Assembly: GCF_044704955.1 (NCBI RefSeq)
Contig: NC_091995.1
Location: forward strand, 26,908,001 to 26,972,000
Direction of reading: 5' to 3'
From: Pristiophorus japonicus
Lineage: Eukaryota
DNA length: 64,000 nucleotides
This document shows, in pieces, positions 8,301-62,372 of this stretch (the first letter of the stretch is position 1; the number at the start of each line of letters is the position of its first letter). Below the pieces are notes generated by a model. The model searched no databases, had not been told where the DNA came from, and was given only the letters and a program-made list of their open reading frames with translations. The translations under genes were made by a program, and so were the position numbers.

Positions 8301-8627
8301 AATCACCGCCCAGAACGACCGGTCTGGATGTCGCCAGCAGCAGTGGGAACTGCTGGAGTAAGGCCAGCCGCTCGCTTCTGAGAGGCGAGGCATACACGTT
8401 AATTAGCCTTAGAGGAACATTTTTATACAATACATCTGCTACGAGGAGGCGGCCGCCCAACACCTCCTTAACTTCGGTGATGGTGAAGTGGCCTCCCCGC
8501 AGCAGAATGCTCAGGCCGGAGGAACGGCGATCGTTGCCTCCTGACCAAACGGGTGGTCCATGGGACCACCATTGCGACCACTGCCGGTAACTGCTGGAGT
8601 GCAGCAAGCCGCACTCCTGCAAGAATA
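5325..8627 (-). pseudogene. Tx1 ORF2 (APE-RT-CCHC), frameshifted; N-terminus continues at 19815-19917
   Basis: ORFs 7585..8694, 6146..7630, 6015..6227 and 5325..5993 are consecutive pieces in different frames. Joining 19917-19815 to 8627 restores MGLKIASINMRSIKSTTRCVSTLRYLAKVKADLLFLQECG. Confidence 0.9.
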
Positions 8628-9324
8628 AGAACATAAGAACATAAGAATTAGGAACAGGAGTAGGCCATCTAGCCCCTCGAGCCTGCTCCGCCATTCAACA
8701 AGATCATGGCTGATCTGGCCGTGGACTCAGCTCCACTTACCCGCCCGCTCCCCATAACCCTTAATTCCCTTATTAAATCTATCTATCTGTGACTTGAATA
8801 CATTCAATGAGCTAGCCTCAACTGCTTCCTTGGGCAGAGAATTCCACAGATTTACAACCCTCTGGGAGAAGAAATTCCTTCTCAACTCGGTTTTAAATTG
8901 GCTCCCCCGTATTTTGAGGCTGTGACCCCGAGTTCTAGTCTCCTCGACCAGTGGAAACAACCTCTCTGCCTCGATCTTGTCTATCCCTTTCATTATTTGA
9001 AATTTTTCTATAAGATCACCCCTCATCCTACTGAACTCCAATGAGTAAAGACCCAGTTTACTCAATCTATCATCATAAGGTAACCCCGTCATCTCCGGAA
9101 TCAACCAAGTGAATCGTCTCTGTACCCCTCCAAAGCCAGTATATCCTTCCTTAAGTAAGGGGACCAAAACTGCACGCAGTACTCCAGGTGCGGCCTCACC
9201 AATACCCTATACAGTTGCAGAAGGACCTCTCTGCTTTTGTACTCCATCCTTCTCGCAATGAAGGCCAACATTTAATTTGCCTTCCTGATTACCTGCTGCA
9301 CCTGCAAACTAACTTTTTGGGATT

Positions 9325-9495
9325 CCTGAAAAAAAAACGCTCAATCTCATCTGATCTTGGAAGCTAAGCAGAGTCAGCCCTGGTTAGTACTTGGATGGGA
9401 GACTACCTTGGAATACCAGGTGCAGGAGGTTTACCGTTGGTGGACTTTGATGTCACCCAGGTCGGGTGGCACGATTTAATGTAATCTAAAAGAGT
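9325..9495 (+). mobile_element. 5S rRNA-derived SINE3-like element or chimera with a Tx1-type 3' tail
   Basis: 9325-9432 resembles vertebrate 5S rRNA from about nt 17 to its 3' end (TCTGATCTTGGAAGCTAAGCAG..CCTGGTTAGTACTTGGATGGGAGAC..GGAATACCAGGTGC). The tail GTCGGGTGGCACGATTTAATGT..CTAAAAGAGT matches the Tx1 3' ends at 16584-16637 and 42700-42748. Confidence 0.85.
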
Positions 9496-10430
9496 TTCAT
9501 GCACAAGGACCAATTGTGGAGCACTGGAGGCGTGGCCTATTCAATTGGAGCCCTGCTGCTGAGAGAGGAGCAGCTACCAACTTTTGCTCCTGCCTGGAGT
9601 GAGCCCTGAGACCAGCCCAGGAAGAGAAGGAAGGAAGGGGCTTCACCACCAACTTTCACCCAGAGGGAGAGGAGGAAAAAGCAGAAAACTTACAACTTTT
9701 TACCATTTCTACAAAGAGTTGGAGAGAGGGGGAAAGACCAACAACAACATCCAGTGTGGAAGGAGGGAGACTCTACCATTCTACAGGTGGGTGTGGGTGC
9801 ATTTCCCAAAAAGACTTTGTTGTATCGGTGGGGGGAGGAAAGAAGACCACTGAGGGCCGGAACATCGCGGGGGGTGTGTGTGTGTGGAAAGTGTGTGTGG
9901 GGGCCTTGCTTACAACTAGGCCCCACACACAACTGAACCCCCCCCCCAAATTACCTAGCCTGGGATAGCTGGAGCTACCAGGCTGAAGATTTCTTTTCTT
10001 TAAATACCCATTTTAACATCGTTAGGATTGTGTGACTGGTTGGCTCTAGCTGCCCCAGGTGAAGACATCTTCTCCCCTCACCTGAAGACCACCCCAAAGA
10101 CTATTTGTGTTTTGCCATCTGGGGATTGCACCCACCCACAGCTGCGAGGGGAGACCTGCCCTCGCAGTTACCCCCCCCCTTCCCACCCCCCTCTCTCTTT
10201 CTCTGTTACTCTGTTTCTCCCCTCTCTCTCTGAGACCCCTTTCTCCCAAATTAATTTTTAAAAAAACAATTGAGACAACTGAGCAGAGGGAGCAAGGCCC
10301 CTCCCCAATTGCCAACTAGGGGAGAGGTGTGCCTCGTTAAGGGCTCCTCTGCTCAGTCTTTAGACAAGAGGCCAATTAAGACCATTAAGGCCTGTGACTT
10401 TGGGGTGGGTGTAGCCCTTAAAGGGACCCC

Positions 10431-12527
10431 GTGATGGCGACTCCATCCACGCCGGTGGCAGGGCCAGCAAGGACATATGCGCAGGCGGTGTCCACATCCA
10501 CGGCACCTCCTGCGCCACCCGCTGCCCTGCCACCTTTTCGACTTATTACAAAAAAACACGGGGTCAAGAGCTACACTCACCCCACAATGACCATCGAGGA
10601 GTGCGTGCGGGCGATGGCTGGGGTAGTCGGCCCCTCGGCCATTGTCGCAGCCTCCAAGATGTCTGGAAAGGCCGTGTTCTTCCTGGGGTCGGAGCGGGCG
10701 GTGTCCCTGGCCCTCGAAAAAGGGCTCACGGTGGGCGGGACGTTCCTGCCGGTGGACCCTCTCGAGGCCACCGCGCAGAGGGTCATCGTTTCAAACGTCC
10801 CGCCCTTTGTTCCCGCTGAGCTCCTCCTCCCTCACCTACAACAACTGGGGGAGGTAAGGTCGGGGATCAACCCCATACCGCTCGGCCTCAGGGAGAACAG
10901 CCTGCGCCACATGTTCTCCTTCCGCTGCCAGCTCTTTGTCCGGCTGGCGCGGGAGGAGACGACGGAGGGAAATTTCAATGTGGTGCACGAGGGGACTGCC
11001 TACCGCGTCTTCTGGACGTCGGACGGCGTGCGGTGCCATGCCTGTAGGGAGGTGGGGCATGTTCGTAAGAACTGCCCCGCCTCCAAGGCCGCCAAACCAC
11101 CGAGGGCGGCCAAGGCTGGCGCCGCCGCCACCCCTCCCCCTAGTTGCGTCCGTGTGCCGGGAGCCGTAGGTGCGCGGGCATCGTCGGGGGCCTTTGTTTT
11201 CACGGCCTCCGGCGGGGGGGAGGGAGAGCGTCCGATCGAAAAGAAGGCGCGGAAGAAGACGAGACATCTAGAGGCGGGTCCCCTCAGTGCGCCGGAAAGT
11301 TTGACCACCGCGCTCAGCCCAACCCAGTCACCGGCGAGCGCGGGGTACCCTGAGCCCGTGCTCTTGAACAACACCGCAGAGGGGCCCGGGCGCGGGCAAG
11401 AAAAGGAAAAGGGGGGGGCGGAGCGGGAGGCCTCGGCAGACATGGAGGTCTCGCTGCCTCAGCGCACCTCCAGCATCAAAAGGAGGCGCCGCTCCGTTGA
11501 GGCGGAGGGGGAGCAACATCCCTCCGTGGAGGAGTCGGTGCCCGCCGCGTGTCCCGCGTCCCCCACCAGCGCCCCCAAGCAGCGCCGTAGGCGGGAGGAG
11601 TCTGTCCCCGGGGAGGGTGAGACAGTCGAGGCGGCCCAGCCTCTGCCTCCCGGGGATGGCGTGGAAGATCTGCCTGTCGTGGGGGGCGTGGGGCTCGCGG
11701 AGGAATGCATTGCCGCCGGGCCGGGCGTCCCGGGGACTGAGGCGGGCGAGGCCGAAAAGGCCGAACCTCAGCCCGCCCAGCCAATACCCAACTTCCCCCG
11801 GGAGTCGCTCGACCCGGCAGAAAATGAAATTAATAATTTTAATAATACTGTACATGCTGGGCTGGGGGGTGGCAGCGGGGAGGGGGAGGAACACCCACCC
11901 TCGCCTCTTGCTGTGGAGCTGGAGCACTTGGAGAGCCTGGGGATTTCCTATGGCCGGGTCTCTCCTTGTTCCCCAGTTCCTGGGGCGGAGGGGGAACCCC
12001 TTCCGCTGTCATTTCCCGACCCAGCACCATTTTTAAAAGAGCCCAGTGGGGCCTCCTCTGCCGACGATCCTGGGGGTGGGATCGGGGCAGTGCCAGGGCC
12101 GGTTGGAGCGGCCGGGTCATTTGCCGTACCTTGTGCGGTCGATGGGCCGGTTGCTGGCGGCCACCTCCCGGAGGAGGACGGGGACTCGGTGGGGGACGCG
12201 GGAGAAAATCTCGAGACCACCGCCAGCGAGGCGGTGGATCTGCTCGCGGCCGCCGCCGAGACCATCCTCATTCCTGCAAAGGAACTCCGGGACTTTTTGG
12301 CCCAGAGCTGGGGTCGCTGCAACCAAGCCCGACTGGCCCTGGAAAAATGGTCCCAGCCAGAGCTTATCAAGGGGTCCGTCCGCGCCGCCGTTAAAACCTT
12401 GGCCGCGGGCGGGCCCTTGACAAAGGAGCAGCACCTTGAGCTGCGCGAGCTCGAGGGACTCCTCGCTGGGCTGCGGAGGGAGCGGAGTTCAACAAAAGAC
12501 TCCGCTCCCTCCCCCACAATAGGTTAA
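10431..12527 (+). CDS. Tx1 ORF1 protein (698 aa), open
   Basis: RRM-like N-terminal region (RVIVSNVPPFVP), CCHC zinc knuckle CHACREVGHVRKNC, long acidic/Pro-rich tail; homologous to 38512-40614. Confidence 0.88.
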   Translation: MMATPSTPVAGPARTYAQAVSTSTAPPAPPAALPPFRLITKKHGVKSYTHPTMTIEECVRAMAGVVGPSAIVAASKMSGKAVFFLGSERAVSLALEKGLTVGGTFLPVDPLEATAQRVIVSNVPPFVPAELLLPHLQQLGEVRSGINPIPLGLRENSLRHMFSFRCQLFVRLAREETTEGNFNVVHEGTAYRVFWTSDGVRCHACREVGHVRKNCPASKAAKPPRAAKAGAAATPPPSCVRVPGAVGARASSGAFVFTASGGGEGERPIEKKARKKTRHLEAGPLSAPESLTTALSPTQSPASAGYPEPVLLNNTAEGPGRGQEKEKGGAEREASADMEVSLPQRTSSIKRRRRSVEAEGEQHPSVEESVPAACPASPTSAPKQRRRREESVPGEGETVEAAQPLPPGDGVEDLPVVGGVGLAEECIAAGPGVPGTEAGEAEKAEPQPAQPIPNFPRESLDPAENEINNFNNTVHAGLGGGSGEGEEHPPSPLAVELEHLESLGISYGRVSPCSPVPGAEGEPLPLSFPDPAPFLKEPSGASSADDPGGGIGAVPGPVGAAGSFAVPCAVDGPVAGGHLPEEDGDSVGDAGENLETTASEAVDLLAAAAETILIPAKELRDFLAQSWGRCNQARLALEKWSQPELIKGSVRAAVKTLAAGGPLTKEQHLELRELEGLLAGLRRERSSTKDSAPSPTIG

Positions 12528-12553
12528 GGTAGAGGTTGCACTATGCTTTTGCC

Positions 12554-15500
12554 ATGAAGATAACCATAGCCAGCCTCAACATCAACGGCGGCAGAGGGGC
12601 ACGCCGTAGATTTGACAATTTTTCGCTCCTGCGGGAGGGGAAATATGCGGTGTGCTTCCTGCAAGAAACCCACACCGTTCCGGGAGACGAAGCCACGTGG
12701 CTCCTGGAATGGCAAGGAGAGGTCCGCATGAGCCACCTCACCGCCATTTCTAGTGGGGTGGCCATCTTGCTGGGCCCGCATTTTCAGCCGGAGATCTTGG
12801 GGGTCGAGGAGCCCGTGCCAGGCCGCTTGCTGCACGTAACGGTTCGCCTGGGGGACGTGCCGCTCCATCTCGTGAACGTGTACGCTCCTCAGCCCGGCCC
12901 GCAGCAGACGCGCTTCTTTGAAGAGGTGTCCGCTCTTCTTGGCTCCGTCGACGTCGGCGACTGCATTGTCCTTGGGGGGGATTTTAACTGCACCCTCGAG
13001 GCGAGGGACCGCTCCGGTGCCCCGCAGTGCATGACGGCGATGGAGAAGTTGAGGGACCTGGTCGGGTCCTTCGACTTGGTGGACGTCTGGCGAAATCTCC
13101 ACCCCGACTCCAGCGCCTTTACTTGGGTGAGGCCTGGAGTAGGATGGTCTAGAGTCGACCGCCTTTACGTGTCTCGGGCGTACGTTTCCTGCGTCCCGGC
13201 GGCCTCCATGCGGCCGGTGCTGTGTTCGGACCAGCACCTGGTGTGGGCTGAGCTCGCTTCGCTCCGCGCGAGGACGGGGTCCGCGTACTGGCACTTTAAC
13301 AACCGGCTGCTGGAGGATGTGCGGTTCCAGGACTCATTCCGTCGATTCTGGTCCGACTGGAGAAGGAAGCAGGGGGGCTTCCCCTCCTTGAGGCTATGGT
13401 GGGACGTGGGCAAGGCTCACGTCCGCGTCTTCTGTCAAGAGTACGCGAGGGGGTCGACCAAGAGGCGGGCGGCCAGAGTCGGCGCCTAGAAAAAGCGGTG
13501 CTCGACCTGGAAGCCCGTCTCGGTCAAGTCGTCCAGGACCCGGCCCTGCGGACGGTGTACGAAGCAAAGAAGGCCGCGCTGAAGGGTCCCGAGGCGCGTT
13601 CGTGAGGTCGCGGATCCGGTTCCTGCGGGATCTGGACCGCGGCTCCCCCTTCTTCTACTCGCTGGAAAAAAGGCAGAGTGTCCGTAAGCAGCTCTTGACG
13701 CTGCTGGCCGACGACGGCTCTCTCGTCTCGGATCCGGAGGGCGTCAACAACAGGGCCCGTGAATATTACGGGGCTCTGTTCTCTCCGGATCCGTCCAGCG
13801 AGGAAGCGCGTAGAGTTTTGTGGGAGGACCTGCCGAAGGTCAGCCCGGAGGGCGCCGAAAATCTGGAAGCTCCGCTAAGCCTGGCGGAGCTGACCAGTGC
13901 CCTCGACCGGCTCTCGAGGGGAAAATCCCCGGGGCTGGACGGGCTGACCGTGGAGTTCCACAGGGCGTTCTGGGACGTCCTGGGGAGCGACTATGCGCGG
14001 GTCCTGGGAGAAAGTCTGGCGACCGGGGAGATGCCCCTCTCTTGGTGCAGGGCAGTCATCGTCCTGCTGCCTAAGAAGGGCGATCTCCGCCTCCTTAAGA
14101 ACTGGCGCCCGGTCTCCCTCCTCAGCACGGACTACAAAATCTTCGCCAGGGCGATGTCTGCTCGCCTTGGTGCCGTGCTGGACCACATGATCCACCCCGA
14201 CCAGTCCTACACGGTCCCGGGCCGGACAATCCACGATAACATCCATCTGGTCCGGGACCTCATCCATTGTTCCCAGGAGGCTGGTCTGTCGGTCGCCTTC
14301 CTATCCCTCGACCAAGAGAAGCCGTTCGACAGGGTGGATCACGACTATCTGCTCGGAACTCTGCGCGCTTTCGGGTTCGGGACGCATTTCGTCGCCCGGA
14401 TCCGACTTTTGTACGCCGCCGCGGAGTGTCTGATTAAGGTTAACGGGTCCTTGACGGCGCCCCTTCGCTTTAGGAGAGGGGTGCGCCAGGGATGCCCCAT
14501 GTCCGGCCAGTTATACGCCGTTTGCGTGGAGCCTTTCCTGCGCCTCCTGCGGACGAGGTTGACGGGACTGGCTCTGCAAGGGCCGGGCGTGGAGGTCGTC
14601 CTCTCGGCTTACGCCGATGACGTGCTCCTCGCGGTAGAGGATCCCGCTGACCTGCGGAGGATGCGTGAGTGCCAGGAGATTTACTCGGCCGCGTCCTCCA
14701 CCAGGATCAACTGGGAGAAATGTTCCGGACTCCTGGTGGGTCAGTGGCGGGTGGACTCCCTGTCGGAGGAGCTCAGGCCTTTTGCCTGGAGCACGACCCA
14801 TCTCCTCTATCTGGGAGTCTACCTTAGCCCCGACGAGGGAGCCTGGCCGGCGAACTGGCAGGAGCTGGAGGCCAAGGTCGCCGCTCGCCTAGGGCGCTGA
14901 ACAGGACTGCTCCGAGTGCTGTCCTACAGGGGTCGAGCGCTAGTCATAAACCAGCTAGTGGCCGCAATGTTGTGGTACCGGCTGGTCACTTTGACCCCTC
15001 CCCCTGCGTTTGTCACCAAGATACAGAAGAAGCTGGTGGACTTCTTCTGGAACAACAGGAAGCACTGGGTCTCTGCTGCGATCTTGAGTCTCCCGCTTGA
15101 GGAGGGCGGTCAGTCGTTGGTGTGCATCAGCGCCCAGCTCGCGACTTTCCGTCTTCAGACCCTGCAGAGATACCTTTACGTCGAGCCCCCTCCTAGGTGG
15201 TGCGCTCTGGCGAGGTATTTCTTCCGCCAGCAGCGCGACCTCAATTATGACACGCAGCTCCTGTTTGTGAACTTGGGGGGTGCCAGGACCGCCCTCCGGG
15301 AGCTGCCTGTCTTTTACAGGGAACTCATCAGGGTCTGGAACAAAGTCTCCACCAAGCGCTGCTCTCCACCGGCTGGAGTGGCGGCCGTCCTGCAGGAGCC
15401 GCTGCTCGGGAATCCGTACCTCCACGACCGACGTTTTATGTGGCGGTTCAAAGAGAGGGCTGTGGCTGGTGAGGTGACCAGGGTCAGGGACCTGCTCGAT

Positions 15501-16435
15501 GGCGGAGGTGCGGGCTGGATGGCGACAGACACGATGGCGCGGCGCCTAAATTCTGCCAACGTCCGCCACGCGGCCGATGCCATCGAGTCGCTAAAAACAG
15601 CTCTGGGCCCTGACTCCGTTAGGTGCATCGAGGAGGCTCAAGCACGTGGGGAGATCCCGTCCGAACTGACCCCCGTCCGGACGGAATTCCTCATCGGCGC
15701 CAAACCCTGGAACCTCCCTTGGGGGCCGGCGCCTCACAACTTGATACGCCTCGGGGAAACCCCTCCGCGCGGAACTGAAAGGCACGGAGGGGTTTCCTGT
15801 CCGGGCTGCTCCTGCACACTCTCAACTTTGCCATCCTCGCCGGCCATCCGGACACGCCATGGCGTACCATCTTGCCGTCCGGAGGAGGCGGCGGTCCCCG
15901 ATGGAGGGCACTCTACGCAGGGGTCCTCCCACTATTCATCGGGGACTTGGCCTGGAGGGTGGTGCACAGAGCAGTGCCGTGCAACAAATTTTTAAGCCGG
16001 TTCACGGACTCCCAGGCCGCCTGCAATTTCTGCGGTCTGGAAGAGTCCGTGTTCCATGTTTTTATGGAATGTACAAGGTTGCAGCCCCTGTTTTATTATT
16101 TGAAGGGGCTGCTCCTGAAATTCTGGCTGAACTTCAGTCCCACTCTCCTGATCTTTGGGCACCCTGTGCGAAGGGGAGCGGGTAGGTCCGAAGGCCTCCT
16201 CGTAGGACTGCTCCTGGGCACGGCCAAGGGTGCCATCAGCCGGTCCAGGCAGCGGGCGGTCGAGGGGGTCGTTCAACCTGACTGCCTGCCTCTCTTCCGC
16301 TCTTACATCCGGTCCAGGGTGTCCTTGGAGATGGAGCACGCGGTGTTCACCGGTACGCTCGCGGCCTTCCGCGAGAGGTGGGCACCGGAGGGACTGGAGT
16401 GCATCATCACGCCCGGCAACCAAATTTTAATTTGA
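12554..16435 (+). pseudogene. Tx1 ORF2 (APE endonuclease, RT, zinc finger) with few disruptions
   Basis: MKITIASLNING, FLQETH, GGDFNC, SRVDR; RT PGLDGL, WRPVSLL, GVRQGCP, AYADD; C-terminal CNFCGLEESVFHVFMEC. Broken by indels near 13480-13600, TGA at 14898-14900 and a micro-inversion/frameshift near 15760. Confidence 0.93.
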
Positions 16436-19009
16436 TTTTACGTTTTAAAGTTTAATTTGTTTTAAATGCCGATGCTTTTAGTGTCCCCTTCCCTTTTATA
16501 GGGGGCACTGGAAAATTGTGATTTTAGTGCCCAAACAAAAAAAGAAAAACTCAAAAAAAAAGGAAAAAAAGGGCCTTGTAAATGTCGGGTGGCACGATTT
16601 AATGTTTTATGTTTTTGCAGGTAGACTCTAAAAAAGTTTCATGCACAAGGAACCCCAGGTCCCTTTGCACCGCAGCATGTTGTAATTTATCCCCATTCAA
16701 ATAGTATTCCCTTTTTTTGTTTTTTTCCCTAAGGTGGATGACCTCACACTTTCCGACATTGTATTCCATCGGCTAAACCTTAGCCCATTCGCTTAACCTA
16801 TCTAAATCTCTTTGCAGCCTCTCTGTGTCCTCTACACAACCCGCTTTCCCACTAATCTTTGTGTCATCTGCAAATTTTGTTACACTACACTCTGTCCCCT
16901 CTTCCAGGTCATCTATATATATTGTAAACAGTTGTGGTCCCAGCACCGATCCCTGTGGCACACCAATAACCACCGATTTCCAACCTGAAAAGGACCCATT
17001 TATCCCGACTCTCTGCTTTCTGTTAGCCAGCCAATTCTCTATCCGTGCTAATACATTTCCACTGACTCCGCGTACCTTTATCTTCTGCAGTAACCTTTTG
17101 CGTGGCACCTTATCGAATGCCTTTTGAAAATCTAAATACACCACATCCATCGGTACACCTCTATCCACCATGCTCGTTATATCCTCAAAGAATTCCAGTA
17201 AATTAGTTAAACATGATTTCCCCTTCATGAATCCATGCTGCATCTACTTGATTGCACTATTCCTATCTAGATTTCCCGCTATTTCTTCCTTAATGATAGT
17301 TTCAAGCATTTTCCCCACTACAGATGTTAAACTAACCGTCCTATAGTTACCTGCCTTTTGTCTGCCACCCTTTTTAACCAGAGGCATTACATGAGCTGCT
17401 TTCCAATCCAGAGTCCAGAGAATTTTGGTAGATTATAACGAATACATCTACTCTAACTTCCGCCATCTCTTTTAATACCCTGGGATGCATTTCATCAGGA
17501 CCAGGGGACTTGTCTGCCTTGAGTCCCAATAGCCTGTCCCCCTAGTGATAGTGATTGTCTTCAGGTCCTCCCTTCCCACATTCATGTGACCAGCAATTTC
17601 TGGCACGGTTTTTGTGTCTTCCACTGTGAAGACCGAAGCAAAATAATTGTTTAAGGTCTCAGCCATTTCCACATTTCCCATAATTAAATCCCCCTTCTCA
17701 TCTTCTAAGGGATCAACATTTCCTTTTGTCATTCTTGTCCGTTTTATATATCTGTAAAAGCTTTTACTATCCGTTTTTATGTTTTGCGCAAGTTTAGCTT
17801 CGTAATCTATCTTTCCTTTCTTTATTGCTTTCTTAGTCATTCTTTGCTGTCGTTTATAATTTTCCCAATCTTCTATTTTCCCACTAACCTTGGCCACCTT
17901 AAACGCATTGGTTTTTAATTTGATACTGACCTTAATTTCCCTGGTTATCCACGGCTGGTTATCCCTTCTCTTACCGCCCTTCTTTTTCATTGGAATATAT
18001 TTTTGTTGAGCACTATGAAAGAGCTCCTTAAAAGTCCTCCACTGTTCCTCAATTGTGCCACCGTTTAGTCTATGTTTCCAGTCTACTTTAGCCAATTCTG
18101 CATTCATCCCACTGTAGTCCCCTTTGTTTAAGCATAGTATGCTCGTTTGAGACACTACTTCCTCACCCTCAATCTGTATTACAAATTCAACCATACTGTG
18201 ATCACTCATTCCAAGAGGATCTTTTATTAGGAGATTGTTTATTATTCCTGTCTCATTACACAGGACTAGATCTAAGATAACTTGCTCCCTTGTCGGTTCT
18301 GTAACATACTGTTCTAAGAAACAATCCCGTATGCATTCTATGAATTCCTCCTCCAGGCTACCCCGTGCGATTTGGTTTGACCAATCGATATGTTGGTTAA
18401 AATCCCCCATGATTACTGCCGTTCCTTTTTCACATGCCTCCATTATTTCCTTGATTATTGCCCACCCCACCGTGAAGTTATTATTTGGGGGCCTATAAAC
18501 TACGCCCACCAGTAACTTTTTCCCCTAACTATCTCTAATCTCCACCCACAATGATTCAACATTTTGTTCATTGGAGCCAATATCGTCTCTCACAACTGCC
18601 CTGATATCATTCTTTATTAACAGAGCTACCCCACCTCCTTTCCCTTCTTGTCTATCTTTCCGAATCGTCAGATACCCCTGCATGTTTTAATACCAGTCTT
18701 GGCCACCCTGCAACCACGTTTCTGTAATGGCCACCAAATCATACCCATTTGTAATGATTTGTGCCGTCAACTCATTTACTTTATATTGAATGCTGCATGC
18801 GTTTAGGTGGAGTGTTTTACTACTAGTTTTTAATCCATGATTTTTAGGTTTGACCCCTCCTGTAGCCCCTTTACATTCAGTGGCCCTTTTTGTTTTTTGC
18901 CTTGGGTTTCTCTGCCCTCCACTTTTACTCATCTCCTTTCTGTCTTATGCTTTTGTCTCCATTTTGTTTCCCTCTGTCTACTTGCATTGGTTCCCATCCC
19001 CCTGCCACA

Positions 19010-19810
19010 TTAGTTTAACTCCTCCCCAACAATACTAGCAAACACTCCCCCTAGGACATTGGTTCCGGTCCTGCCTATGTGCAGACCGTCCGGTTTGTAC
19101 TGGTCCCACCTCCTCCAGAACCGGTTCCAATGCCCCAGGAATTTGAATCTCTCCCTGCTGCACCACTGCTCAAGCCACGTATTCATCTGAGCTATACTGC
19201 GATTCCTACTCTGACTAGCACGTGGCACTGGTAGCAATCCTGAGATTACAACTTTTGAGGTCCTACGTTTTAATTTAGCTCCTAGCTCCTTAAATTCATC
19301 TCGTAGGATCTCATCCCTTTTTTTACCTATATCGTTGGTACCAATGTGCACCACAACAACTGGCTGTTCACCCTCCCTTTTCGGAATGTCCTGCACCCGC
19401 TCCGAGACATCCTTGACCCTTGCACCAGGGAGGCAACATACCATCCTGGAGTCTCGGTTGCGGCCATAGAAACGCCTATCTATTCCCCTTACAATCGAAT
19501 CTCCTATCACTATCGCTCTCCCACTCTTTTTCCTGCCCTCCTGTGCAGCAGAGCCAGCCCCGGTACCATGAACTTGGCTGCTGCTGCCCTCCCCTGATGA
19601 GTCATCCTCCTCAACAGTACTCAAAACGGTGTATCTGTTTTGCAGGGGGATTACCGCAGGGGACCGCTGCACTACCTTCCTTGCACTGCTCTTCCTGCTG
19701 GTCTTCCATTCCCTAGCTGGCTGTGGACCCTTCACCTGCGGTATGGCCAACTCACTAAACGTGCTATTTACATCATTCTCAGCATCATGGATGCTCCAGA
19801 GTGAATCCAC
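19010..19810 (-). pseudogene. CR1 ORF1 with SGNH/GDSL esterase domain
   Basis: GDSIVRG, VCCLPGA, VVVHIGTND and DGLH motifs in ORF 19010..19864; its 5' end runs into Tx1 sequence. Confidence 0.85.
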
Positions 19811-21034
19811 CCTCATAGCAGGTCTGCCTTGACCTTGGCAAGGTACCGCAAGGTGGAAACACATCGCGTAGTTGACTTAATGCTACGCATGTTAATGGAT
19901 GCAATCTTCAAACCCATTTTTAAATTGATGGTTACAGTCCAAAAATTACATATAGATCACGCAGTCCTTTGGCCCTGTGGCCTGTTCCCGTATACATAGG
20001 TTTACTTTAAACTTTTCTACTGCACCTTGGCTGAGATATGGGTTGTCCTCTGCCTTGGGGATGGTTCGACCAGGGGACGCCAGCAGTGTGGACGGGAGGT
20101 CCTCCATGTCAACTGGGCTGCCCTCGCCTGGTGTTGGTTGTTCCTTGTGTGCATCCCCTGTGGTGTCATCGCTCACAGCGTTCTGGAGTTGGGGTGCATC
20201 TGTCACTTCGTCACTCCCAGAGATCCGGAGCCGGGGTGCATTGGTGACATCACTGCTCCCGGGGTCCCGGAGCTGGACTGCGCTGGTCGCATTGGCATGT
20301 TGCCTCTTCTTCTGCTGGTGGTAGTGAGGGTTTTTGCCTCGTCCTTCATCATTGGATGAGCTGCAGCCACTGCTGTCCGTCGTGGACTCTAGCCGTCTTT
20401 TGCCTCTCGTTTCTGCAGGAGGCCCCTTTTCCTTTGACTTGGTAGCCTTCTTCTTCTTGACGAGCTGCCATTCCTGTTTTCCTTCTGCTTCTGCTCCCTC
20501 CTCTTCCATGGACTTGGTGTCTCGGGGGGGAGTTTCACTGCTGGGTGCTAGTGTCTGGCAGCTTGCCATGGCTGCAGTCCGTGTGGTGAAGGTGGTCCCA
20601 CAGTGCTGTTAGGGAGGGAGTTCCAGGATTATGACCCAGCGATGATGAAGGAACGGCGATATATTTCCAAGTCAGGATGGTGTGTGACTTGGAGGAGAAC
20701 TTGCAGGTGATGGTGTTCCGAGGCACCTGATGCCTTTGTCCTCCTAGATGGCAGAGGTCATGGGTTTGTCAAAGCAGCCTGAGCGAGTTGCTGAAATGCA
20801 TCCTGTGAATATGCGAATAGCCCCAGAGCACAGATAAAAACACCAAATAAGTGGGGTTACGGGAAGGGCAATGCACTCTGCACAGGTAGCTGTACACTCG
20901 TAGCTTGAACTTATAGATTGAGACACAATGTGGCCACTGTTAGGAGCAGGGTTCTTAAGCAATAGAGGTGAGCAAACTGGGGGAGACAGGGAAAGGATGA
21001 GTCTGAGAACTAATGCTGTATCTCTGACTTACGA

Positions 21035-35189: not shown

Positions 35190-37456
35190 CTAAAATATAA
35201 ATGAGTGAATCAGAACAGTTTACACTTTATTTACAATTCTTTTTAAATAATACAATTCAACCATGTTCCCGCTTGTTAAAGGGACACAACCACTCGAACC
35301 TGCAAGCTAACCAAAAACGTTTCAGAAAACCGAACAAATCAAATTACACACAATATTACAGGTGGGGTTTAATCATTACACAAACAGTGGCAGCTGTGTA
35401 AATGAATCCACTTCTCCCCATGGCAACAGATGCTGCTAACTTTGACCCCTCTCACCTTCACTATTTAAAGTGTGTCAGTGTCTTTGTTGGTAATCTTCAG
35501 CAGCTCACCAACGGTTGCCCAGTCAGCCCATGTAAACAAGAGAAGATCAGAAGTACAGGAGGAGCAGGAGTAGGTCATTTGGCTCTGCCATTCAATAAGA
35601 TCATGATCTGATTATAGGCTCAGCTCCACTGCCCTGCCTGCCTTATACCCTTATCACTCAAAAATCTGTCTATCTCTGCCTTAAATATATTCAATGACCC
35701 AGCCTTCACATCTCTCTGGGGCAGAGAATTCCATAGATTTACAACCTGCTGAGAAGAAATTTCTCCTCATTTCAGTTTTAAAAGGGGGCCTCTATGACTA
35801 TGGGCTCGATTTTCCCCATTCATTTGCACCGCTTTTTTGGCGTATTTATTTTTTTCAATGTTTCTCCTGCGATCTGCACTGGCGTAGCTGACTTAGTTAC
35901 TATTTTTCTAGGCCAGTTTTCTTTTACGTCATTCCCTCATTCCCTCATGTCTGGGCCGTTTTTTTTCAATTGTTCGCAGTTTGGCCAAAATATTTTTCTC
36001 TTAGGTATTTGGCCACTCCTGAAAACCCTTCTGGTGAGTTAAGACAACCAGCGCACATTTACAAATCTGCGCTGAAAGATGCCATTGTTTTTAAATCGAA
36101 GATTTTGGAGGGAGTCAAGAACACTGTCAAAATCAATAATAAAGTTCAACTTTTCTTTTTTACCTGTTAATGTAGAAGTGTAAATTTGTTGGATTTCAGA
36201 AGTTCTCTCATTTTTTAAACTTATTCACATGCCACCAGCGAACGCCTTGAGACAGGGCTGGAGGTCGGAGGTTTGGCCGGCAGAATCGGCCCCGTGCCCG
36301 GTCACAGAGGCTCGGCTACAAAACAAGCCATGGGGGGAAGGAGAGAGAGAGAGAGCGAGGTGCTGATTGGAAGGCTTGGAGCCCGGGGAGAGGGAGGGAG
36401 AGAGAGAGAAATCACAAGAATCCAATTAGTAAAGGGGGTGGGGGGAGGAAAGAGGAGAGAGAGAGGTGTCGATTGGAAGGCTTGGAGCCCGGGGAGGGGG
36501 AGGGAGAGAGAGAAGTCACAAGACTTCAATTTAGGGTGAGGGGGAAGAGAGGAGAAGTCACAAGACCGTTGAGTGTGGTCCACCAATACAGACCTGGAGA
36601 GATACAACTGCGAACCTGTGCTGCCTGCTTTCCTACGTTTTGAGCTTCTTTCAAAGGTTAAATTTAAGTATGGGGGCAATACTGACAATGTCATTCCTTG
36701 TGCGAGCCTTGTGCATCATGGTGCTACATAGGAGACATAAGAACATAAGAACTAAGAATTAGGAACAGGAGTAGGCCATCGAGCCTCTCGAGCCTGCTCC
36801 GCCATTCAGTAAGATCATGGCTGATCTGGCCGTGGACTCAGCTCCACTTACCCGCCCTCTCCCCGTAACCCTTAATTCCCTTATTGGTTAAAAATCTATC
36901 TATCTGTGATTTGAATATATTCAATGAGCTAGCCTCAACTGCTTCCTTGGGCAGAGAATTCCACAGATTCACAACCCTCTGGGAGAAGAAATTCCTTCTC
37001 AACTCGGTTTTAAATTGGCTCCCCCGTATTTTGAGGCTGTGCCCCCCAGTTCTAGTCTCCCCAACCAGTGGAAACAACCTATCTGCCTCTATCCTGTCTA
37101 TCCCTTTCATTATTTTAAATGTTTCTATAAGATCACCCCTCATCCTTCTGAACTCCAACGAGTAAAGACCCAGTCTACTCAATCTATCATCATAAGGTAA
37201 CCCACTCATCTCCGGAATCAGCCTAGTGAATCGTCTCTGTACCCCCTCCAAAGCTAGTATATCCTTCCTTAAGTAAGGTGACCAAAACTGCACGCAGTAC
37301 TCCAGGTGCGGCCTCACTAATACCCTGTACAGTTGCAGCAGGACCTCCCTGCTTTTGTACTCCATCCCTCTCGCAATGAAGGCCAACATTCCATTCGCCT
37401 TCCTGATTACCTGCTGCACCTGCAAACTAACCTTTTGGGATTCATGCACAAGGACC

Positions 37457-37556
37457 AACCACAAAAAAAAGAAGAAAAAAAGGGCATTGTAAATGTAGGT
37501 GTTTCCCCCAGATCGGGGGGCACGGTTTAATGTTTTTTGTTTACTCCTAAAAGAGT
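37457..37556 (+). mobile_element. 100-bp 5'-truncated 3' tail of the CR1-targeting Tx1
   Basis: Near-identical to 42650-42748; flanked by TTCATGCACAAGGACC (37441-37456) and TTCATGTACAAGGACC (37557-37572). Confidence 0.9.
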
Positions 37557-38511
37557 TTCATGTACAAGGACCAATGGTGGAGCTTTGGAGGCGTGGCCTA
37601 ATGAGTTGGAGCCGTGAGCAGTGAGAGAAGGAGCTGCTGCTTTTGCTCCTGTCTGGGAGGCCTTTGAGAGCCCTGAGACCAGCCCAGGAAGAGGAGGAAG
37701 GAAGGGGCTTGCTACAATTCAACATCCGTAGGGAGAGGAGGAGAGCTGAAAAATTTATTATTTACTACAACTACAGAGAGTTGGAGAGAGGGGAAAAAAA
37801 CAACCTGAGGAAAAACCATCCAGTGTGGAAGGAGGGAGAGTCATTTCCACATCTTCGACAGGTGGGTGTGTTTTGGTTCATTCCCCAAAAGACTTTGTTG
37901 TATCGGTGGGGGGAGGAAAGAAGATAACTTGAGTGCCAGAACATCGCGGGGGGTGTGTGTGTGTGGAAGTGTGTGTGGGGGTCTTGCTTACAGCTAGGCC
38001 CCACACACCACCGAAGAACCCCTCCCCCATTGCCTAGCCTGGGATAGCTGGAGCTACCTGGCTGAAGAATCTTTAATCACCCTATTGAACATCGTTGGGA
38101 GTGTGTGCCTGGGTGGCTCCAGCTACCCCAGGTGAAGACATCTTCTCCCCCCACCCGAAGACCACTCTCCAAAGACTGTGTTTTTTGCCATCTGGGGAGT
38201 GCACCCCAAGAAACACCCACCCACCGCTGTGAGGGGAGACCTGCCCTCGCAGCCTCCCTCCTTCCCAACCCCTCCCTCTATCTCTCTCTCTCTGTCCCTC
38301 CCCTCTCTCTCTGAGAGCCCTTTCCTCCTAATTTCTTTTAAAAAAACCAATGAAGACAACTGAGCAGAGGGTGCAAGGCCCCTCCCCAATTGCCAACTAG
38401 GGGAGAGGTGTGCCTCTTTCAGAGCTCCCTCTGTTCAAATATTCAAACGAAGCCACTTAAGACCATTAAGGCCTGTGACTTTGGGGTGGGTGTGGCCCTT
38501 AAAGGGACCCC

Positions 38512-40614
38512 ATGATGGCGACCCCATCCACGCCAGTGGCAGGGCCAGCTAGGACATATGCGCAGGTGGCGTCCACATCCACGGCGCCTCCTGCGCCTCC
38601 TGCTGCCCTGCCACCATTCAGACTGATAACTAAAAAACACGGGGTCAAGAGCTACACTCACCCCACAATGAGCATTGAGGAGTGCGTGCGGGCGGTGGCC
38701 GGGGTAGTCGGCCTCTCAGCCATTGTCGCGGCCTCCAAGATGTCTGGGAAGGCCGTGTTCTTCCTGGGGTCGGAGCGGGCCGTGTCCCTGGCCCTCGAAA
38801 AGGGGCTCACGGTGGGCGGGAGGTTCCTGCCGGTGGACCCTCTCGAGGCCACCGCGCAGAGGGTCATCATTTCAAACATCCCGCCCTTTGTTCCCGCTGA
38901 ACTCCTCCTCCCTCACCTACACCAACTGGGGGAGGTAAGGTCGGGGATCAACCCCATACCGCTCGGCCTCAGGGAGAGCAGCCTGCACCACGTGTTCTCC
39001 TTCCGCCGCCAGCTCTTTGTCCGGCTGGCGCGGGAGGAGACGACGGAGGGCTATTTTAATGTGGTGCACGAGGGGACTGCCTACCGCGTCTTCTGGACGT
39101 CGGACGGCGTGCGGTGCCATGCCTGCAGGGAGGTGGGGCACGTTCGCAAGAACTGCCCCGCCTCCAAAGCCACCAAACCACCGAAGGCGGCCAAGGCTGG
39201 CGCCGCCGCCACCCCTCCCCCTAGTAGCGTCCGCGTGCCGGGAGCTGTGGGTGCGCGGGCATCGTCGGGGGCCTTTGTTTTCACGGCCTCCAGCGGGGGG
39301 GAGGGAGAGCGTCCGATCAGAAGGAAGGCGCGGAAGAAGGCGAAACATCTGGAGGCAGGTCCCCTCGGTGCGCCAGACAATCTGTTTATCGCGCTCAGCC
39401 CAACCCCGTCACCGGCGAGCGTGGGGTGCCCTGAGCCCGTGCCTGAACCCTCGATCAATACTACAGAGGGGTTCGGGCACGGGCATGATAAGGAAAAGGG
39501 GGGAGTGGAGCGGGAGGCCTCGGCAGACATGGGGGTCTCCCTGCCTCCGCTCCCCCCCAGGAACAAAAGGAGGCACCGCTCGAATGAGACGGAGGGGGAA
39601 CAACATCCCTCCGCGGAGGAGTTGGTGCCCGCCGCGTGTCCCGCGTCCCCCACCAGCGCCCCCAAGCTGCGCTGTAGGCGAGAGGAGTCTGTCCCCGGGG
39701 AGGGTGAGACAGTCGAGGCTGCCCAGCCGCTGCCTCCCGGGGATGGCGTGAAATATCTGCCTGTCGTGGGGGGCGTGGGACCAGCGGAGGAGTGCATCGC
39801 CGCCGGGTCGAGCGTCCCGGGGACTGAGGCGGGCAGGGCCGAAAAGGCCGAACCTGAGCTCGCCCAGCTATTAACCAACTTCCCCCAGGTTTCGCTCGGC
39901 CCGGAAGAAACGGAAATTTTGAATTTTAATGATTCTGTACACGCTGGGCCGGGGGGTGGCAGCGGGGAGGGGGAAGAACAACAACCCTCGCCCCCTACTG
40001 TGGAGCTGAGGGACTTGGTGGACCTAGAGAATTTCCTAAACCAGGTCTCTCCGTGTTCCCCGGCTCCTGGGGCGGAGGAGGAACCCCTTCCGCTGTCGCT
40101 TCCCGACCCAGCACCACTTTTAAAAGAGCCCAGTGGGGACTCCTCTGCCGATGATCCTGGGGGTGGGATCGGGGCAGAGCCAGGGCCGGATGGAGCGGCC
40201 GGGCCGTTTGCCGTTCCTCGTGCGGTCAACGGGCCGGCTGCTGGCGGCGACCTCCCGGGGGAGGACGGGGACTCGGTGGGGGACGCGGGAGAAGATCACG
40301 AGTCCATCGCCAGTGAGGCAGTGGATCTGCTCGCGTCCGCCGCTGAGACCCTCCTCATTCCTGCAAAGGAACTCCGGGACTTTTTGGTCCAGTGCCGGGG
40401 TCGCCGCGACCAAGCCCATCTGGCCCTGGAAAGATGGTCTGAGCCGGTGTTGCTCATCGCTTCCGTCCGCGCCGCCGCTAAAACCATGGCCGCGGGCGGG
40501 CCCTTATCAAGGGCGCAAGGCCTTGAGCTGCGCCGGCTCAAAAAGTTCCTCGCTGGGCTGCTGAAGGAGTGGAGGTCAACAAACGACTCCACTCCCTCCC
40601 CCACAATAGGTTAG
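38512..40614 (+). CDS. Tx1 ORF1 protein (700 aa), open
   Basis: CHACREVGHVRKNC knuckle; colinear with 10431-12527. Confidence 0.88.
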   Translation: MMATPSTPVAGPARTYAQVASTSTAPPAPPAALPPFRLITKKHGVKSYTHPTMSIEECVRAVAGVVGLSAIVAASKMSGKAVFFLGSERAVSLALEKGLTVGGRFLPVDPLEATAQRVIISNIPPFVPAELLLPHLHQLGEVRSGINPIPLGLRESSLHHVFSFRRQLFVRLAREETTEGYFNVVHEGTAYRVFWTSDGVRCHACREVGHVRKNCPASKATKPPKAAKAGAAATPPPSSVRVPGAVGARASSGAFVFTASSGGEGERPIRRKARKKAKHLEAGPLGAPDNLFIALSPTPSPASVGCPEPVPEPSINTTEGFGHGHDKEKGGVEREASADMGVSLPPLPPRNKRRHRSNETEGEQHPSAEELVPAACPASPTSAPKLRCRREESVPGEGETVEAAQPLPPGDGVKYLPVVGGVGPAEECIAAGSSVPGTEAGRAEKAEPELAQLLTNFPQVSLGPEETEILNFNDSVHAGPGGGSGEGEEQQPSPPTVELRDLVDLENFLNQVSPCSPAPGAEEEPLPLSLPDPAPLLKEPSGDSSADDPGGGIGAEPGPDGAAGPFAVPRAVNGPAAGGDLPGEDGDSVGDAGEDHESIASEAVDLLASAAETLLIPAKELRDFLVQCRGRRDQAHLALERWSEPVLLIASVRAAAKTMAAGGPLSRAQGLELRRLKKFLAGLLKEWRSTNDSTPSPTIG

Positions 40615-40639
40615 GTAGAGGTTGCACTATGCTCTTGTC

Positions 40640-42544: not shown

Positions 42545-43822
42545 TTTTATGTTTTTAAGTTAATTTGTTTTAATTGCCGGTGCTTTTAGTGTCCCCCTCC
42601 CCTTTTATCGGGGGCACTTGGAAAAAAATTTGATTATGTGCCCCAAAAAACCCCCCCAAAAAATAAGAAAAAAGGGCCTTGTAAATGTTGGTGTTTCCCC
42701 CAGATCGGGGGGCATGGTTTAATGTTTTTTGTTTACTCCTAAAAGAGTTTCATGCACAAGGACCCCCAGGTCCCGCTGCACCGCAGCATGTTGTAATTTC
42801 TCCCCATTCAAATAACATTCCCTTTCACTGTTTTTTTTTCCAAGGTGGATGACCTCACATTTTCCGACATTGTATTCCATCTGCCAAACCTTAGCCCATT
42901 CGCTTAACCTATCTAAATAATTGATTCGACTTCATCGCATCAGGAATATCAGAGCCCGTAGGGTGCTGGGCAGGAGGCCTTACCCACCTTGGGTATATTG
43001 AGACAGGCATTCATACCTCTACCTGAGTGATGCAGAATGTGTCGAAATGCTGCGTTTCCACAAAGAAGTTGTAAGTGAGATCTGTGAGTTGGTCAAAGCA
43101 GACCTGCAACCTAGAAGCATCAGGAGGACTGCTTTGTCAATTGAAGTGAAGGTTACAGCTGCACTTTCATTCTATGCCTCCGGATCATTTCAAGCTACAA
43201 CTGGGGATGTGTGCGCCGTCTCTCAACATGCAACACATGTCTCCATTTGCCAGGTCACGGCTGCACTGTACGCATGTAGGAATTACTTAATAAAGTTCCC
43301 CATGACCGCCCAAGCAATCCATGACAGGGCTGTCAGTTTCTCCAGGATTGCTGGCTTCCCAAAGTTATGGGATTGCATTGATTGTACCCACATTGCCTTA
43401 CGAGCACCTTTAAAGAATTCCGAGATGTACAGGAACAGAAAACCCTGGCAGCATCCATGATGCGTTCATCCTACGCAACAGTATTTTATCTGCCATGTTT
43501 CAACTCAGAGTGGGAAAACAGAGCTTGGTAAGTCAGAGAGTCTTAAGGGTTAATCTCTTTTATACCATTTGGAGGCTGGTGGCAATTGCTAGTAGCCTCT
43601 AAGTAAGATTAACAGTTAAATATTTAGGATTCTTTCAGGCTGAAGTAGAGACAAAAAGCATGTGGGGCGATCCCGTCTGAACTGACCACCGTCCGGATGG
43701 AATTCCTCATCGGCGCCAAGCTACGAAACCTCCCTCGGGAGCCGGCGCCTCACTTGAGCCTCCTCCGGGAAATACCCTCCGTGCCTTTCAGTTCTGCATG
43801 GAGGGGATTCCAGTACGGGCTG

Positions 43823-62079: not shown

Positions 62080-62372
62080 CTATGGGTGTGTTATGAAATG
62101 CATGTTTGAAAAGAAAAAATGTAAATGTACCGTCACCCATTCCGGGCTCTGTATTGTAACACATGAAATGTAATTTGTGTAAATGTACCACAATGTACCC
62201 TGTTTATTGTACTGAATCGCAGTTGAACAGAAAAACGAGAAATGTAACGGAACTGCCGTCAGCACCCAGATGTATTGTATGGGATTGCTGACCGCAGCGA
62301 AATGTAATGAAATGCCATTGAATGTACTGTACAGATTCTTTTTATGAATAAAGTATATTTTGAAAAAAAAAA
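62080..62372 (+). mobile_element. Tx1 3'UTR fragment with poly(A), related to the element at 4906-20570
   Basis: GAACTGCCGTCAGCAC/TC..ATGTATTGTATGG and TATGAATAAA.TATATTTTGAAA match the reverse complement of 4906-5035; 5' boundary approximate. Confidence 0.75.

What the first reader, a model, noticed from the sequence alone, without database searches (positions are those of the whole stretch)
9496..16653. Tx1 retrotransposon family that site-specifically targets the ORF2 of CR1 retrotransposons
Seen: TTCATGCACAAGGACC (antisense of the CR1 codons for VLVHE in RDLGVLVHESQK) is the TSD at 9496, 16638, 37441, 37557 and 42749. This means four inserts at the identical nucleotide in two separate CR1 copies, all antisense to the host. 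The two CR1 hosts sit in different contexts (a Tx1 versus a Harbinger), the two long Tx1 copies differ visibly in UTRs and ORF1 C-terminus, and the passengers differ, so duplication of one composite cannot explain all four. Known: Tx1-clade APE endonucleases can be sequence-specific (Tx1L/Tx2L into the Tx1D/Tx2D DNA transposons, Keno into U2, Mutsu into 5S). Inference: a hyperparasite using an abundant LINE as a safe harbour and disrupting its ORF2. I do not know of a described CR1-targeting family but cannot search.
Basis: partly seen in the sequence, partly recalled or inferred. Interest (0 to 1): 0.92.

Follow-up and report, generated by a model that had tools for sequence, protein, structure and literature searches.

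The report
LINE that inserts into one CR1 site
A family of L1/Tx1-type jumping genes in this vertebrate genome inserts again and again at one exact 16-base site inside the reverse-transcriptase gene of another jumping gene (CR1); this is a new target for an already known habit of Tx1-type elements.

Summary
TTCATGCACAAGGACC, or a copy with one mismatch, occurs five times (0.08 matches expected by chance). The copies bracket four inserts in two separate CR1 elements, all antisense to CR1 and all with the same 3' junction.

- **The inserts.** Two are full-length 5-7 kb elements with a CCHC-type ORF1 and an ORF2 carrying APE, RT and zf-RVT domains. Human L1 ORF2p is the closest solved relative. 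One insert is a 100-bp 5'-truncated tail. One is a 5S-rRNA piece fused to the same kind of tail.
- **A duplicated composite is rejected.**
  - The two long copies differ by 17-18 % in their UTRs but only 2-6 % in ORF2 parts, while their CR1 hosts differ by about 5 % (p=3e-16).
  - Each short insert shares diagnostic tail bases with its own neighbour.
  - The hosts have different ends and flanks.
- **Site occupancy in the window.** Both CR1 copies with a perfect site are occupied. Four copies with imperfect sites are empty.
- **An exception.** A third, related copy with a different tail sits in a non-CR1 site with its own 14-bp duplication.
- **Not tested.** Tx1-clade membership was not tested against named references.
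- **Elsewhere in this genome.** First readers of this scan noted the same thing at four other places. Those notes are unchecked.

Tx1 elements that target other transposons are known; I found no report of CR1 as the target.

The parts
8622..9325 (-). CR1 host A, 3' part: ORF2 C-terminal region, 3' UTR and the (CATAAGAA)n tail as read on the + strand. It ends with TTC, the first three bases of the target.
   Evidence: It is 93.7 % identical to host B, and its flank to the left is unrelated to B's.
9326..9495 (+). Short insert XA: 5S rRNA-derived part (about position 17 to 120 of 5S, 9326-9431) fused to a 64-nt tail of the alpha type (9432-9495).
   Evidence: Rfam RF00001 at 53.7 bits. Tail alignment A1.
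9496..9511 (+). Target-site duplication copy, exact.
9512..16637 (+). Tx1-like element A (alpha lineage), full length. 5' UTR 9512-10430; ORF1 10431-12527; APE 12536-13489; RT 13602-14900; zf-RVT region 15872-16435; 3' UTR 16436-16637. ORF2 is broken into at least four pieces.
16638..16653 (+). Target-site duplication copy with one mismatch.
16654..20569 (-). CR1 host A, 5' part: RT 16773-17243, APE 17472-18509, esterase-type ORF1 19010-19864. The host is a near full-length CR1.
36733..37440 (-). CR1 host B, 3' part. The ORF2 C-terminal 205 codons are open, followed by the 3' UTR and the 8-nt repeat tail.
37441..37456 (+). Target-site duplication copy, exact.
37457..37556 (+). Short insert XB: 100-bp 5'-truncated tail of the beta lineage.
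37557..37572 (+). Target-site duplication copy with one mismatch.
37573..42748 (+). Tx1-like element B (beta lineage). It has the full 5' end and ORF1 38512-40614 (700 aa, open). About 2 kb of ORF2 is deleted, corresponding to A 12797-14788.
42749..42764 (+). Target-site duplication copy, exact.
42765..42918 (-). CR1 host B, remaining 154 bp. The CR1 is 5'-truncated here, while other CR1 copies of the genome run on.
   Evidence: Loose end behind 42918.
43655..47011 (+). Related copy Tx1-C, 5'-truncated. Its homologous parts are 43656-43826 and 46284-46914 plus a different 3' UTR end. It is split by a 2.46-kb foreign insert (43827-46283) and flanked by a 14-bp duplication TGAAGTAGAGACAA at 43641-43654 and 47012-47025. 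It is not in CR1.
59006..59021 (-). Empty target site in another CR1 copy, with 2 mismatches in the 16-mer and GTGT instead of GGGA upstream. Further empty, more diverged sites lie near 55640 (+), 50330 (-) and 44500 (-).

Best explanation
An L1-group, most likely Tx1-clade, non-LTR retrotransposon family has an apurinic-type endonuclease that recognises one sequence in the CR1 ORF2.

**The target.** It lies in the conserved ...RDLGVLVHE... stretch just after the RT domain, about 205 codons before the stop. Most 5'-truncated CR1 copies longer than about 0.73 kb therefore still carry it.

**Insertion mechanism (inferred from the junctions).**
- The enzyme nicks the CR1 sense strand between ...GCATGAA and TCCCAAAA.
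- It primes reverse transcription of its own RNA there.
- The other strand is cut 16 bp away, which produces the 16-bp duplication.
- The element therefore always lies antisense to CR1.

**Stacking.** The duplication rebuilds the site on both sides of each insert, so later copies stack at the same place.

**Lineages.** At least two lineages (alpha, beta), with diverged UTRs and ORF1, use the same site.

**The 5S insert.** The same machinery carried a 5S-rRNA sequence joined to its tail, either as a SINE or as a template-switch chimera.

**What is shown and what is inferred.** Shown: the anatomy, the independence of the events, and L1-group membership. Inferred: that the endonuclease is the specificity determinant, the nick positions, and the genome-wide scale.
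For: - **Same 3' junction four times**, and the same 5' junction in three of four inserts.
- **Domains.** Weak CCHC hit in ORF1; Exo_endo_phos, RVT_1 and zf-RVT in ORF2. RT against human L1 ORF2p gives E=2e-46, and APE gives E=4e-21.
- **Endonuclease loop.** The L1 endonuclease carrying the Tx1L beta-hairpin loop (2v0r) scores slightly better than wild type, and the loop shares T-x-V-R..G.V..S (PMC1950540).
- **Independent events.** Region-wise A/B divergence is 16.8 % (5' UTR), 10.7 % (ORF1), 2.2 % (APE start), 6.5 % (ORF2 3' half) and 18 % (3' UTR), against 5.1 % for the CR1 hosts. Non-CpG sites give 171/1042 against 38/804, p=3e-16.
- **Tail lineages.** XA shares three diagnostic tail bases with A, and XB shares three with B.
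- **Separate hosts.** Each CR1 host has its own 3' tail and its own flanks. One is near full length and the other is an 865-bp fragment.
- **Occupancy.** 2 of 2 CR1 copies with a perfect site are occupied. 4 of 4 with imperfect sites are empty.
- **Other contigs of the same organism** include unoccupied CR1 sites. One contig joins the CR1 upstream part directly to the duplication and the 5' end of the element, a form present at neither locus here (tables 5c and 7).
- **Precedent.** Published Tx1 families behave the same way on other transposons (PMC4494074).
Against: - Only two loci were read directly. The genome-wide distribution of 3' flanks was not obtained.
- A related copy (Tx1-C) lies in a non-CR1 site, so the wider group is not bound to CR1.
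- No named Tx1 reference sequence could be brought in, so the clade is not proven.
- Both long copies are dead, and no endonuclease activity was measured.
- dN/dS between A and B is near 1 in parts of ORF2. Part of the A/B difference is therefore decay after insertion.
Confidence: 0.85

Rival explanations
1. One CR1-plus-Tx1 composite arose once and was then copied, by segmental duplication or by retrotransposition of the whole composite. The shared junctions would then be inherited rather than repeated.
For: The two loci share the same architecture, with a short insert upstream of a long one. Overall identity of Tx1 (88-92 %) and CR1 (91-94 %) is of the same order.
Against: - Divergence is not uniform: 2 % to 18 % along the element, and the UTRs are 3.5 times more diverged than the CR1 hosts (p=3e-16).
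- The short inserts are not homologous to each other outside the tail (5S part against A-rich UTR part), and each carries the tail variants of its neighbour.
- The flanks differ on both sides, and the hosts have different lengths.
- Even under this rival, the two short inserts would still be two further hits on the same nucleotide.
Confidence: 0.04
2. The insert spreads between CR1 copies by ectopic gene conversion or recombination, using CR1 homology as arms and needing no site-specific endonuclease.
For: CR1 copies are very abundant and similar: at least six lie in 64 kb. Conversion would reproduce identical junctions.
Against: - Conversion does not create extra copies of the 16-bp duplication between stacked inserts.
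- It does not create 5'-truncated or 5S-fused inserts that end at the same 3' junction. These are marks of target-primed reverse transcription.
- The host flanks next to the inserts are no more alike than the rest of the CR1.
Confidence: 0.04
3. The precision comes mainly from base pairing rather than from the endonuclease. A read-through RNA 3' end that carries CR1 sequence would pair with nicked CR1 DNA, or a local DNA structure would attract a loosely specific nuclease.
For: Elements sitting in CR1 would make read-through transcripts ending in TTCATGC... This is inference; no data here bear on it. One of four events has a different second-strand break (3 bp instead of 16).
Against: - The first-strand nick is at the same phosphodiester bond in 4 of 4 events, and the second-strand cut is 16 bp away in 3 of 4.
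- Tx1L endonuclease alone is known to be sequence-specific in vitro (PMC1950540).
- Copies with 2-4 changed bases around the site are empty, which fits protein recognition and pairing about equally well.
Confidence: 0.07

Closest known systems
Tx1L of Xenopus laevis (targets the DNA transposon Tx1D)
   Same: An APE-type LINE of the L1 group that inserts at one sequence inside another transposon. Its endonuclease was shown to be site-specific (PMC1950540, PMC4494074). The beta-hairpin loop of the endonuclease here resembles the Tx1L loop.
   Different: The target here is the coding region of another LINE (CR1 ORF2), not a DNA transposon. The duplication is 16 bp. RT-tree placement next to Tx1L was not tested.
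Tx1-Mar families and SINEU of crocodilians (Kojima 2015, PMC4494074)
   Same: - Several related Tx1 families share one position in a transposon and insert in a fixed orientation.
- Small-RNA-headed non-autonomous elements (U1/U2 heads there, a 5S head here) land in the same target.
- Sister families use other transposons (LTR elements, Harbinger), as Tx1-C and the notes on LTR-targeting copies in this genome suggest.
   Different: The target is Mariner there and CR1 here. SINEU is a proven multi-copy family, whereas the 5S-tail insert here is a single observed copy.
Mutsu, Keno, Kibi and Koshi (Tx1 clade, targeting 5S rDNA, U2 snRNA genes and microsatellites)
   Same: Sequence-specific Tx1-clade elements that use multicopy sequences as harmless landing sites (PMC4494074, PMC4640811).
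   Different: Their targets are host RNA genes or simple repeats, not another retrotransposon. The 5S sequence here is a passenger, not the target.
R1/R2 in 28S rDNA
   Same: Exact repeated insertion at one nucleotide of a multicopy target, 5'-truncated copies at the same 3' junction, and inactivation of the occupied unit.
   Different: They belong to different clades, and R2 uses a restriction-like endonuclease. Their target is a host gene under selection, not a selfish element.
L1-U6 type chimeric retro-pseudogenes and SINE3 (5S-headed SINEs)
   Same: A small pol III RNA sequence with its full 3' end is joined to the 3' end of a LINE. This is the arrangement expected from template switching during reverse transcription, or from a SINE born that way.
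   Different: The partner is a site-specific Tx1-like element, so the chimera sits in the CR1 site. The copy number is unknown.

Membership tests
L1 group of non-LTR retrotransposons (L1 + Tx1 clades) | ORF2 with an N-terminal APE-type endonuclease followed by RT; closest relatives are L1-type ORF2 proteins. | tested here: met
   Exo_endo_phos E=5.9e-10 and RVT_1 E=3.4e-37. Best solved relatives are human L1 ORF2p (RT E=2e-46, APE E=4e-21), far ahead of R2 (E=4e-21 for RT).
Tx1 clade | The RT domain groups with Tx1L, Keno and similar elements rather than with the L1 clade in a phylogeny (RTclass1 criterion). | not testable with these tools
   No named Tx1 reference could be retrieved. Homologue names were uninformative. 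The three capped protein searches are limited by query length, and ORF2 here is in pieces.
Tx1 clade | ORF1 of the RRM/CCHC kind, not the L1 Transposase_22 kind (PMC5203782). | tested here: inconclusive
   Only a weak zf-CCHC hit (17.4 bits, cut-off 20.8) in both ORF1 copies. No Transposase_22 at E<=0.01.
Tx1 clade | Target-sequence preference: a fixed position and orientation in a repeated target (criterion of PMC4494074: over 20 % of flanks of one kind). | tested here: inconclusive
   4 of 4 inserts with the alpha/beta tail are at the same nucleotide in this window. Genome-wide flanks could not be collected: searches were closed, and laid contigs only.
Tx1 clade | Endonuclease beta-hairpin loop of the Tx1L type. 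| tested here: inconclusive
   The loop reads T-WVRPGVGW-S, against Tx1L T-YVRVRDGHVSQ-S and L1 T-FFSAPHHTY-S. The graft 2v0r scores 74.8 bits against 72.7 bits for wild type, a small difference.
CR1 clade (the target element) | APE + RT ORF2, an esterase-type ORF1, no poly(A), and a 3' end of short tandem repeats. | tested here: met
   RVT_1 and Exo_endo_phos_2 hits; Lipase_GDSL_2 in the upstream ORF. (CATAAGAA)n ends at 8622 and 36733. The C-terminal region is CR1-typical. The esterase ORF1 criterion comes from PMC13343379. No RT tree was made.
SINE3 / 5S-headed SINE (for the 9326-9495 insert) | A 5S-derived head with the internal promoter region, plus a LINE-derived tail. | tested here: met
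   RF00001 at 53.7 bits, above the gathering score of 38. 5S positions about 17-120 are present. The tail is shared with Tx1-A.
SINE3 / 5S-headed SINE (for the 9326-9495 insert) | A multi-copy family with the same head-tail junction. | not testable with these tools
   There is only one copy in the window, and no access to the rest of the genome.

The most novel reading that the evidence does not exclude
This would be a large, undescribed LINE-on-LINE parasite system.
- A Tx1 lineage has an endonuclease retargeted to a protein-constrained motif of CR1 ORF2.
- It has occupied a sizeable share of the matching CR1 copies across a CR1-rich genome.
- It has spawned a 5S-headed SINE that shares the target.
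- Close sister lineages have switched to other transposon sites (an LTR, and the TGAAGTAGAGACAA site).

Together these would form a natural series for mapping how APE-type endonucleases change sequence specificity.
Probability: 0.45. Interest if true: 0.6.

Novelty: new member of a known kind. Interest (0 to 1): 0.45.

Why it matters
Site-specific APE-type LINEs are few, and they are studied as natural models for programmable insertion. A family aimed at a 16-bp site in another LINE adds a new target class.

CR1-group elements make up 22-34 % of elasmobranch genomes (PMC13343379; the host is inferred to be such a genome, not verified). This gives many natural occupied and empty sites with known mismatches, which is in effect a ready-made specificity screen.

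Related lineages with other targets in the same genome could show which endonuclease residues set the target.

For genome annotation, it explains recurrent CR1-Tx1-CR1 nests and stacked arrays.

Tried and rejected
No further loci of this or related genomes could be fetched, including the 80 %-identical ENA fragments P0016, P0249 and P0262.
- **Metagenome scans.** The tail pattern gave nothing. The 16-mer gave 120 loci that are all chance matches, with no BLAST similarity to CR1 or Tx1.
- **Read laying** had only Logan contigs to lay.
  - It shows that the family and the CR1 are very abundant, that empty CR1 sites exist, and that CR1 runs on past 42918 in other copies.
  - The list of loose ends is cut to the best-supported rows, so the absence of a row 'behind 42748' cannot be read as uniform flanks. 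Depth was not used as copy number.
- **Naming the clade through homologues failed.** Turtle hits are 'unnamed protein product', Logan/ENA representatives have no names, and Atlas clusters are 'hypothetical protein'.
- **The ORF1 search** found only turtle proteins annotated as 'proline-rich protein 36-like' or 'nascent polypeptide-associated complex subunit alpha, muscle-specific form-like'.
- **The tail hairpin** is not more stable than shuffled sequence (z from -0.8 to +0.2). It stays an aside.
- **The match at 29881** is not a CR1 site.
- **No consensus was built and no frame was repaired.** N runs were left alone.
Full report
**Observation.**
- TTCATGCACAAGGACC occurs exactly at 9496, 37441 and 42749. 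It occurs with one mismatch at 16638 and 37557. Chance expectation with up to two mismatches is 0.08.
- Reading the junctions gives two loci.
  - Locus A: CR1 (antisense) ...GGGA-TTC | 5S-plus-tail insert XA 9326-9495 | duplication | element A 9512-16637 | duplication | CR1 continues.
  - Locus B: CR1 ...GGGA | duplication | 100-bp tail XB 37457-37556 | duplication | element B 37573-42748 | duplication | CR1 to 42918.
- All four inserts end ...CTAAAA(G/A)AGT directly before TTCATG.
- The two long elements start with the same bases, AAT(T/G)GTGGAGC, directly after ...GGACC. XB also starts directly after GGACC.
- XA has only TTC left of the upstream copy, so its second-strand break lay 3 bp rather than 16 bp from the first.

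**What the inserts are.**
- Element A has a 698-aa ORF1 with a weak CCHC knuckle. Its ORF2 is broken into pieces carrying Exo_endo_phos, RVT_1 and zf-RVT.
- Element B has an open 700-aa ORF1 and lacks about 2 kb of ORF2.
- The closest solved proteins are human L1 ORF2p: RT E=2e-46 and APE E=4e-21, far ahead of R2. The element is therefore in the L1 group.
  - ORF1 has no L1-type Transposase_22 domain, which fits what PMC5203782 reports for Tx1.
  - There is no poly(A) tail.
  - The endonuclease hairpin loop resembles the Tx1L loop grafted into 2v0r (PMC1950540).
- I could not obtain any named Tx1 reference, so the clade is not formally tested.
- The nearest proteins in the databases are turtle reverse transcriptases at 57-66 % identity. 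A few unnamed ENA fragments reach 80 %.

**What the host is.**
- The flanks translate, antisense, to ...EYYLNGDKLQHAAVQRDLGFLVHE (host A) and VLVHESQKVSLQVQQVIRKANGMLAFIARG...[10 protein letters not shown]... (host B), up to a stop 205 codons later.
- Host A continues through RT, APE and an esterase-type (GDSL) ORF1.
- Both hosts end in (CATAAGAA)n, as read on the + strand.
- This is the CR1 pattern described in PMC13343379.

**Independence of the events.** It fails.
- *Divergence.*
  - The A/B difference is 16.8 % in the 5' UTR, 10.7 % in ORF1, 2.2 % at the start of APE, 6.5 % in the 3' half of ORF2 and 18 % in the 3' UTR.
  - The CR1 hosts differ by 5.1 % over 700 bp and 9.1 % over 154 bp.
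  - At non-CpG sites the UTRs have 171/1042 differences against 38/804 in CR1 (Fisher p=3e-16). For transversions alone, p=4e-12.
  - Dead copies of one composite would have decayed evenly. This pattern means A and B come from source elements that had already diverged.
  - In one search the left CR1 block of A was taken to 9332 instead of 9325. This adds at most seven columns and does not change the result.
- *Tail lineages.* XA and A share GTCGGGTGGCACGATTT, whereas XB and B share ATCGGGGGGCA(C/T)GGTTT. There are therefore two lineages, alpha and beta, each seen twice.
- *Hosts.* They are separate CR1 insertions. Each has its own 3' tail and an unrelated left flank. One is near full length, and the other is 5'-truncated at 42918.
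- *Rivals.* Gene conversion would not create extra duplication copies, nor 5'-truncated or 5S-fused inserts. A duplicated composite and conversion are therefore both unlikely.

**Specificity within the window.** Six CR1 copies cover the site.
- The two with a perfect 16-mer and GGGA upstream are occupied, each twice.
- Copy c59 (two mismatches, GTGT upstream), copy c55 (deletion in the site) and copies c50 and c44 (a diverged subfamily) are empty.
- There is no perfect unoccupied site in the window.

**Beyond the window.**
- Metagenome scans returned only chance matches.
- Four runs were laid as Logan contigs. More than 200,000 contigs of the first run (X1) match the stretch. Many contigs show the empty CR1 site: the loose end before 42747 reads as CR1 upstream sequence. 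CR1 runs on past 42918 in other copies.
- One contig joins 37440 directly to 37557, that is CR1, duplication and element 5' end without XB. That form is present at neither locus here.
- This is suggestive only.
- First readers of this scan noted Tx1 copies stacked at one site in CR1 at four other places in this genome, and Tx1-like copies at fixed sites in LTRs at two more. I could not check those notes. I count them as leads, not support.

**A related copy elsewhere.**
- Tx1-C spans 43655-47011. It is 86 % identical to A in the ORF2 end, is 5'-truncated, and is later split by a 2.46-kb insert.
- It has a different 3' UTR end and its own 14-bp duplication, TGAAGTAGAGACAA, in non-CR1 sequence.
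- So the wider group is not tied to CR1. Either sister lineages have other targets, as in crocodilians (PMC4494074), or off-target events occur.

**Mechanism.**
- The junctions fit target-primed reverse transcription.
  - The first nick is on the CR1 sense strand between ...GCATGAA and TCCCAAAA...
  - The second cut is 16 bp away on the other strand.
  - The orientation is fixed.
  - Stacking follows because each insertion rebuilds the site.
- That the endonuclease sets the specificity is inferred from Tx1L (PMC1950540). Pairing of read-through RNA with the nicked target may contribute.
- XA is either a 5S-headed SINE or a template-switch chimera. It carries 5S positions about 17-120, including the internal promoter region, joined at the 5S 3' end to 64 nt of alpha tail.

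**Comparison and novelty.**
- Tx1-clade families that target other transposons at fixed positions are published. So are small-RNA-headed SINEs that share their target: Tx1L into Tx1D; Tx1-Mar into Mariner together with SINEU; and others into LTR elements and Harbinger (PMC4494074).
- I found no report of CR1, or of any LINE coding region, as a Tx1 target in six literature searches or in the papers read.
- Repbase and Dfam could not be searched.
- I therefore rate this a new member of a known kind, of moderate interest.

Noticed in passing
window 43655-47011 (duplications at 43641-43654 and 47012-47025): A third, 5'-truncated Tx1-like copy with a different 3' UTR end. It is flanked by a 14-bp duplication, TGAAGTAGAGACAA, in non-CR1 sequence, and is split by a 2.46-kb insert that contains a CR1 fragment and ends in (GAT)n. 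It may mark a sister lineage with another target.
   Followed up: partly
window 6383-8523 (- strand): Another L1/Tx1-type element (APE and RT, 33-34 % identical to element A). It is 5'-truncated exactly where the 3' repeat tail of CR1 host A ends (8621/8622). Which of the two inserted first was not resolved.
   Followed up: partly
window 9451-9470, 37503-37522, 42695-42714: A small stem-loop in the 3' tail, with one compensatory pair change between lineages (CACCC...GGGTG against CCCCC...GGGGG). Element A has lost the 5' arm through a 17-bp deletion. Folding energy is not better than for shuffled sequence.
   Followed up: partly
window 25433-26711, 50975-51839, 56644-57931: G/GA-rich minisatellites (21-27-bp units such as GGGGGAGAGAGAGTCGCGGAGGTCGGG). 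A 40-bp unit at 25433-25734 recurs, apparently on the opposite strand (by eye), at 57767-57931. The first array contains the two N runs (25981-26146, 26423-26575), which were left alone.
   Followed up: no
proteins P0124-P0126 (turtle genomes): The only database relatives of the 700-aa ORF1 are turtle proteins annotated as 'proline-rich protein 36-like' or 'nascent polypeptide-associated complex subunit alpha, muscle-specific form-like'. They are probably unrecognised retrotransposon ORF1 products.
   Followed up: no
window 62363-63152: A 247-bp tandem repeat (3.1 copies) containing internal 36-bp GGTGGGTGGGGTGGA... units.
   Followed up: no
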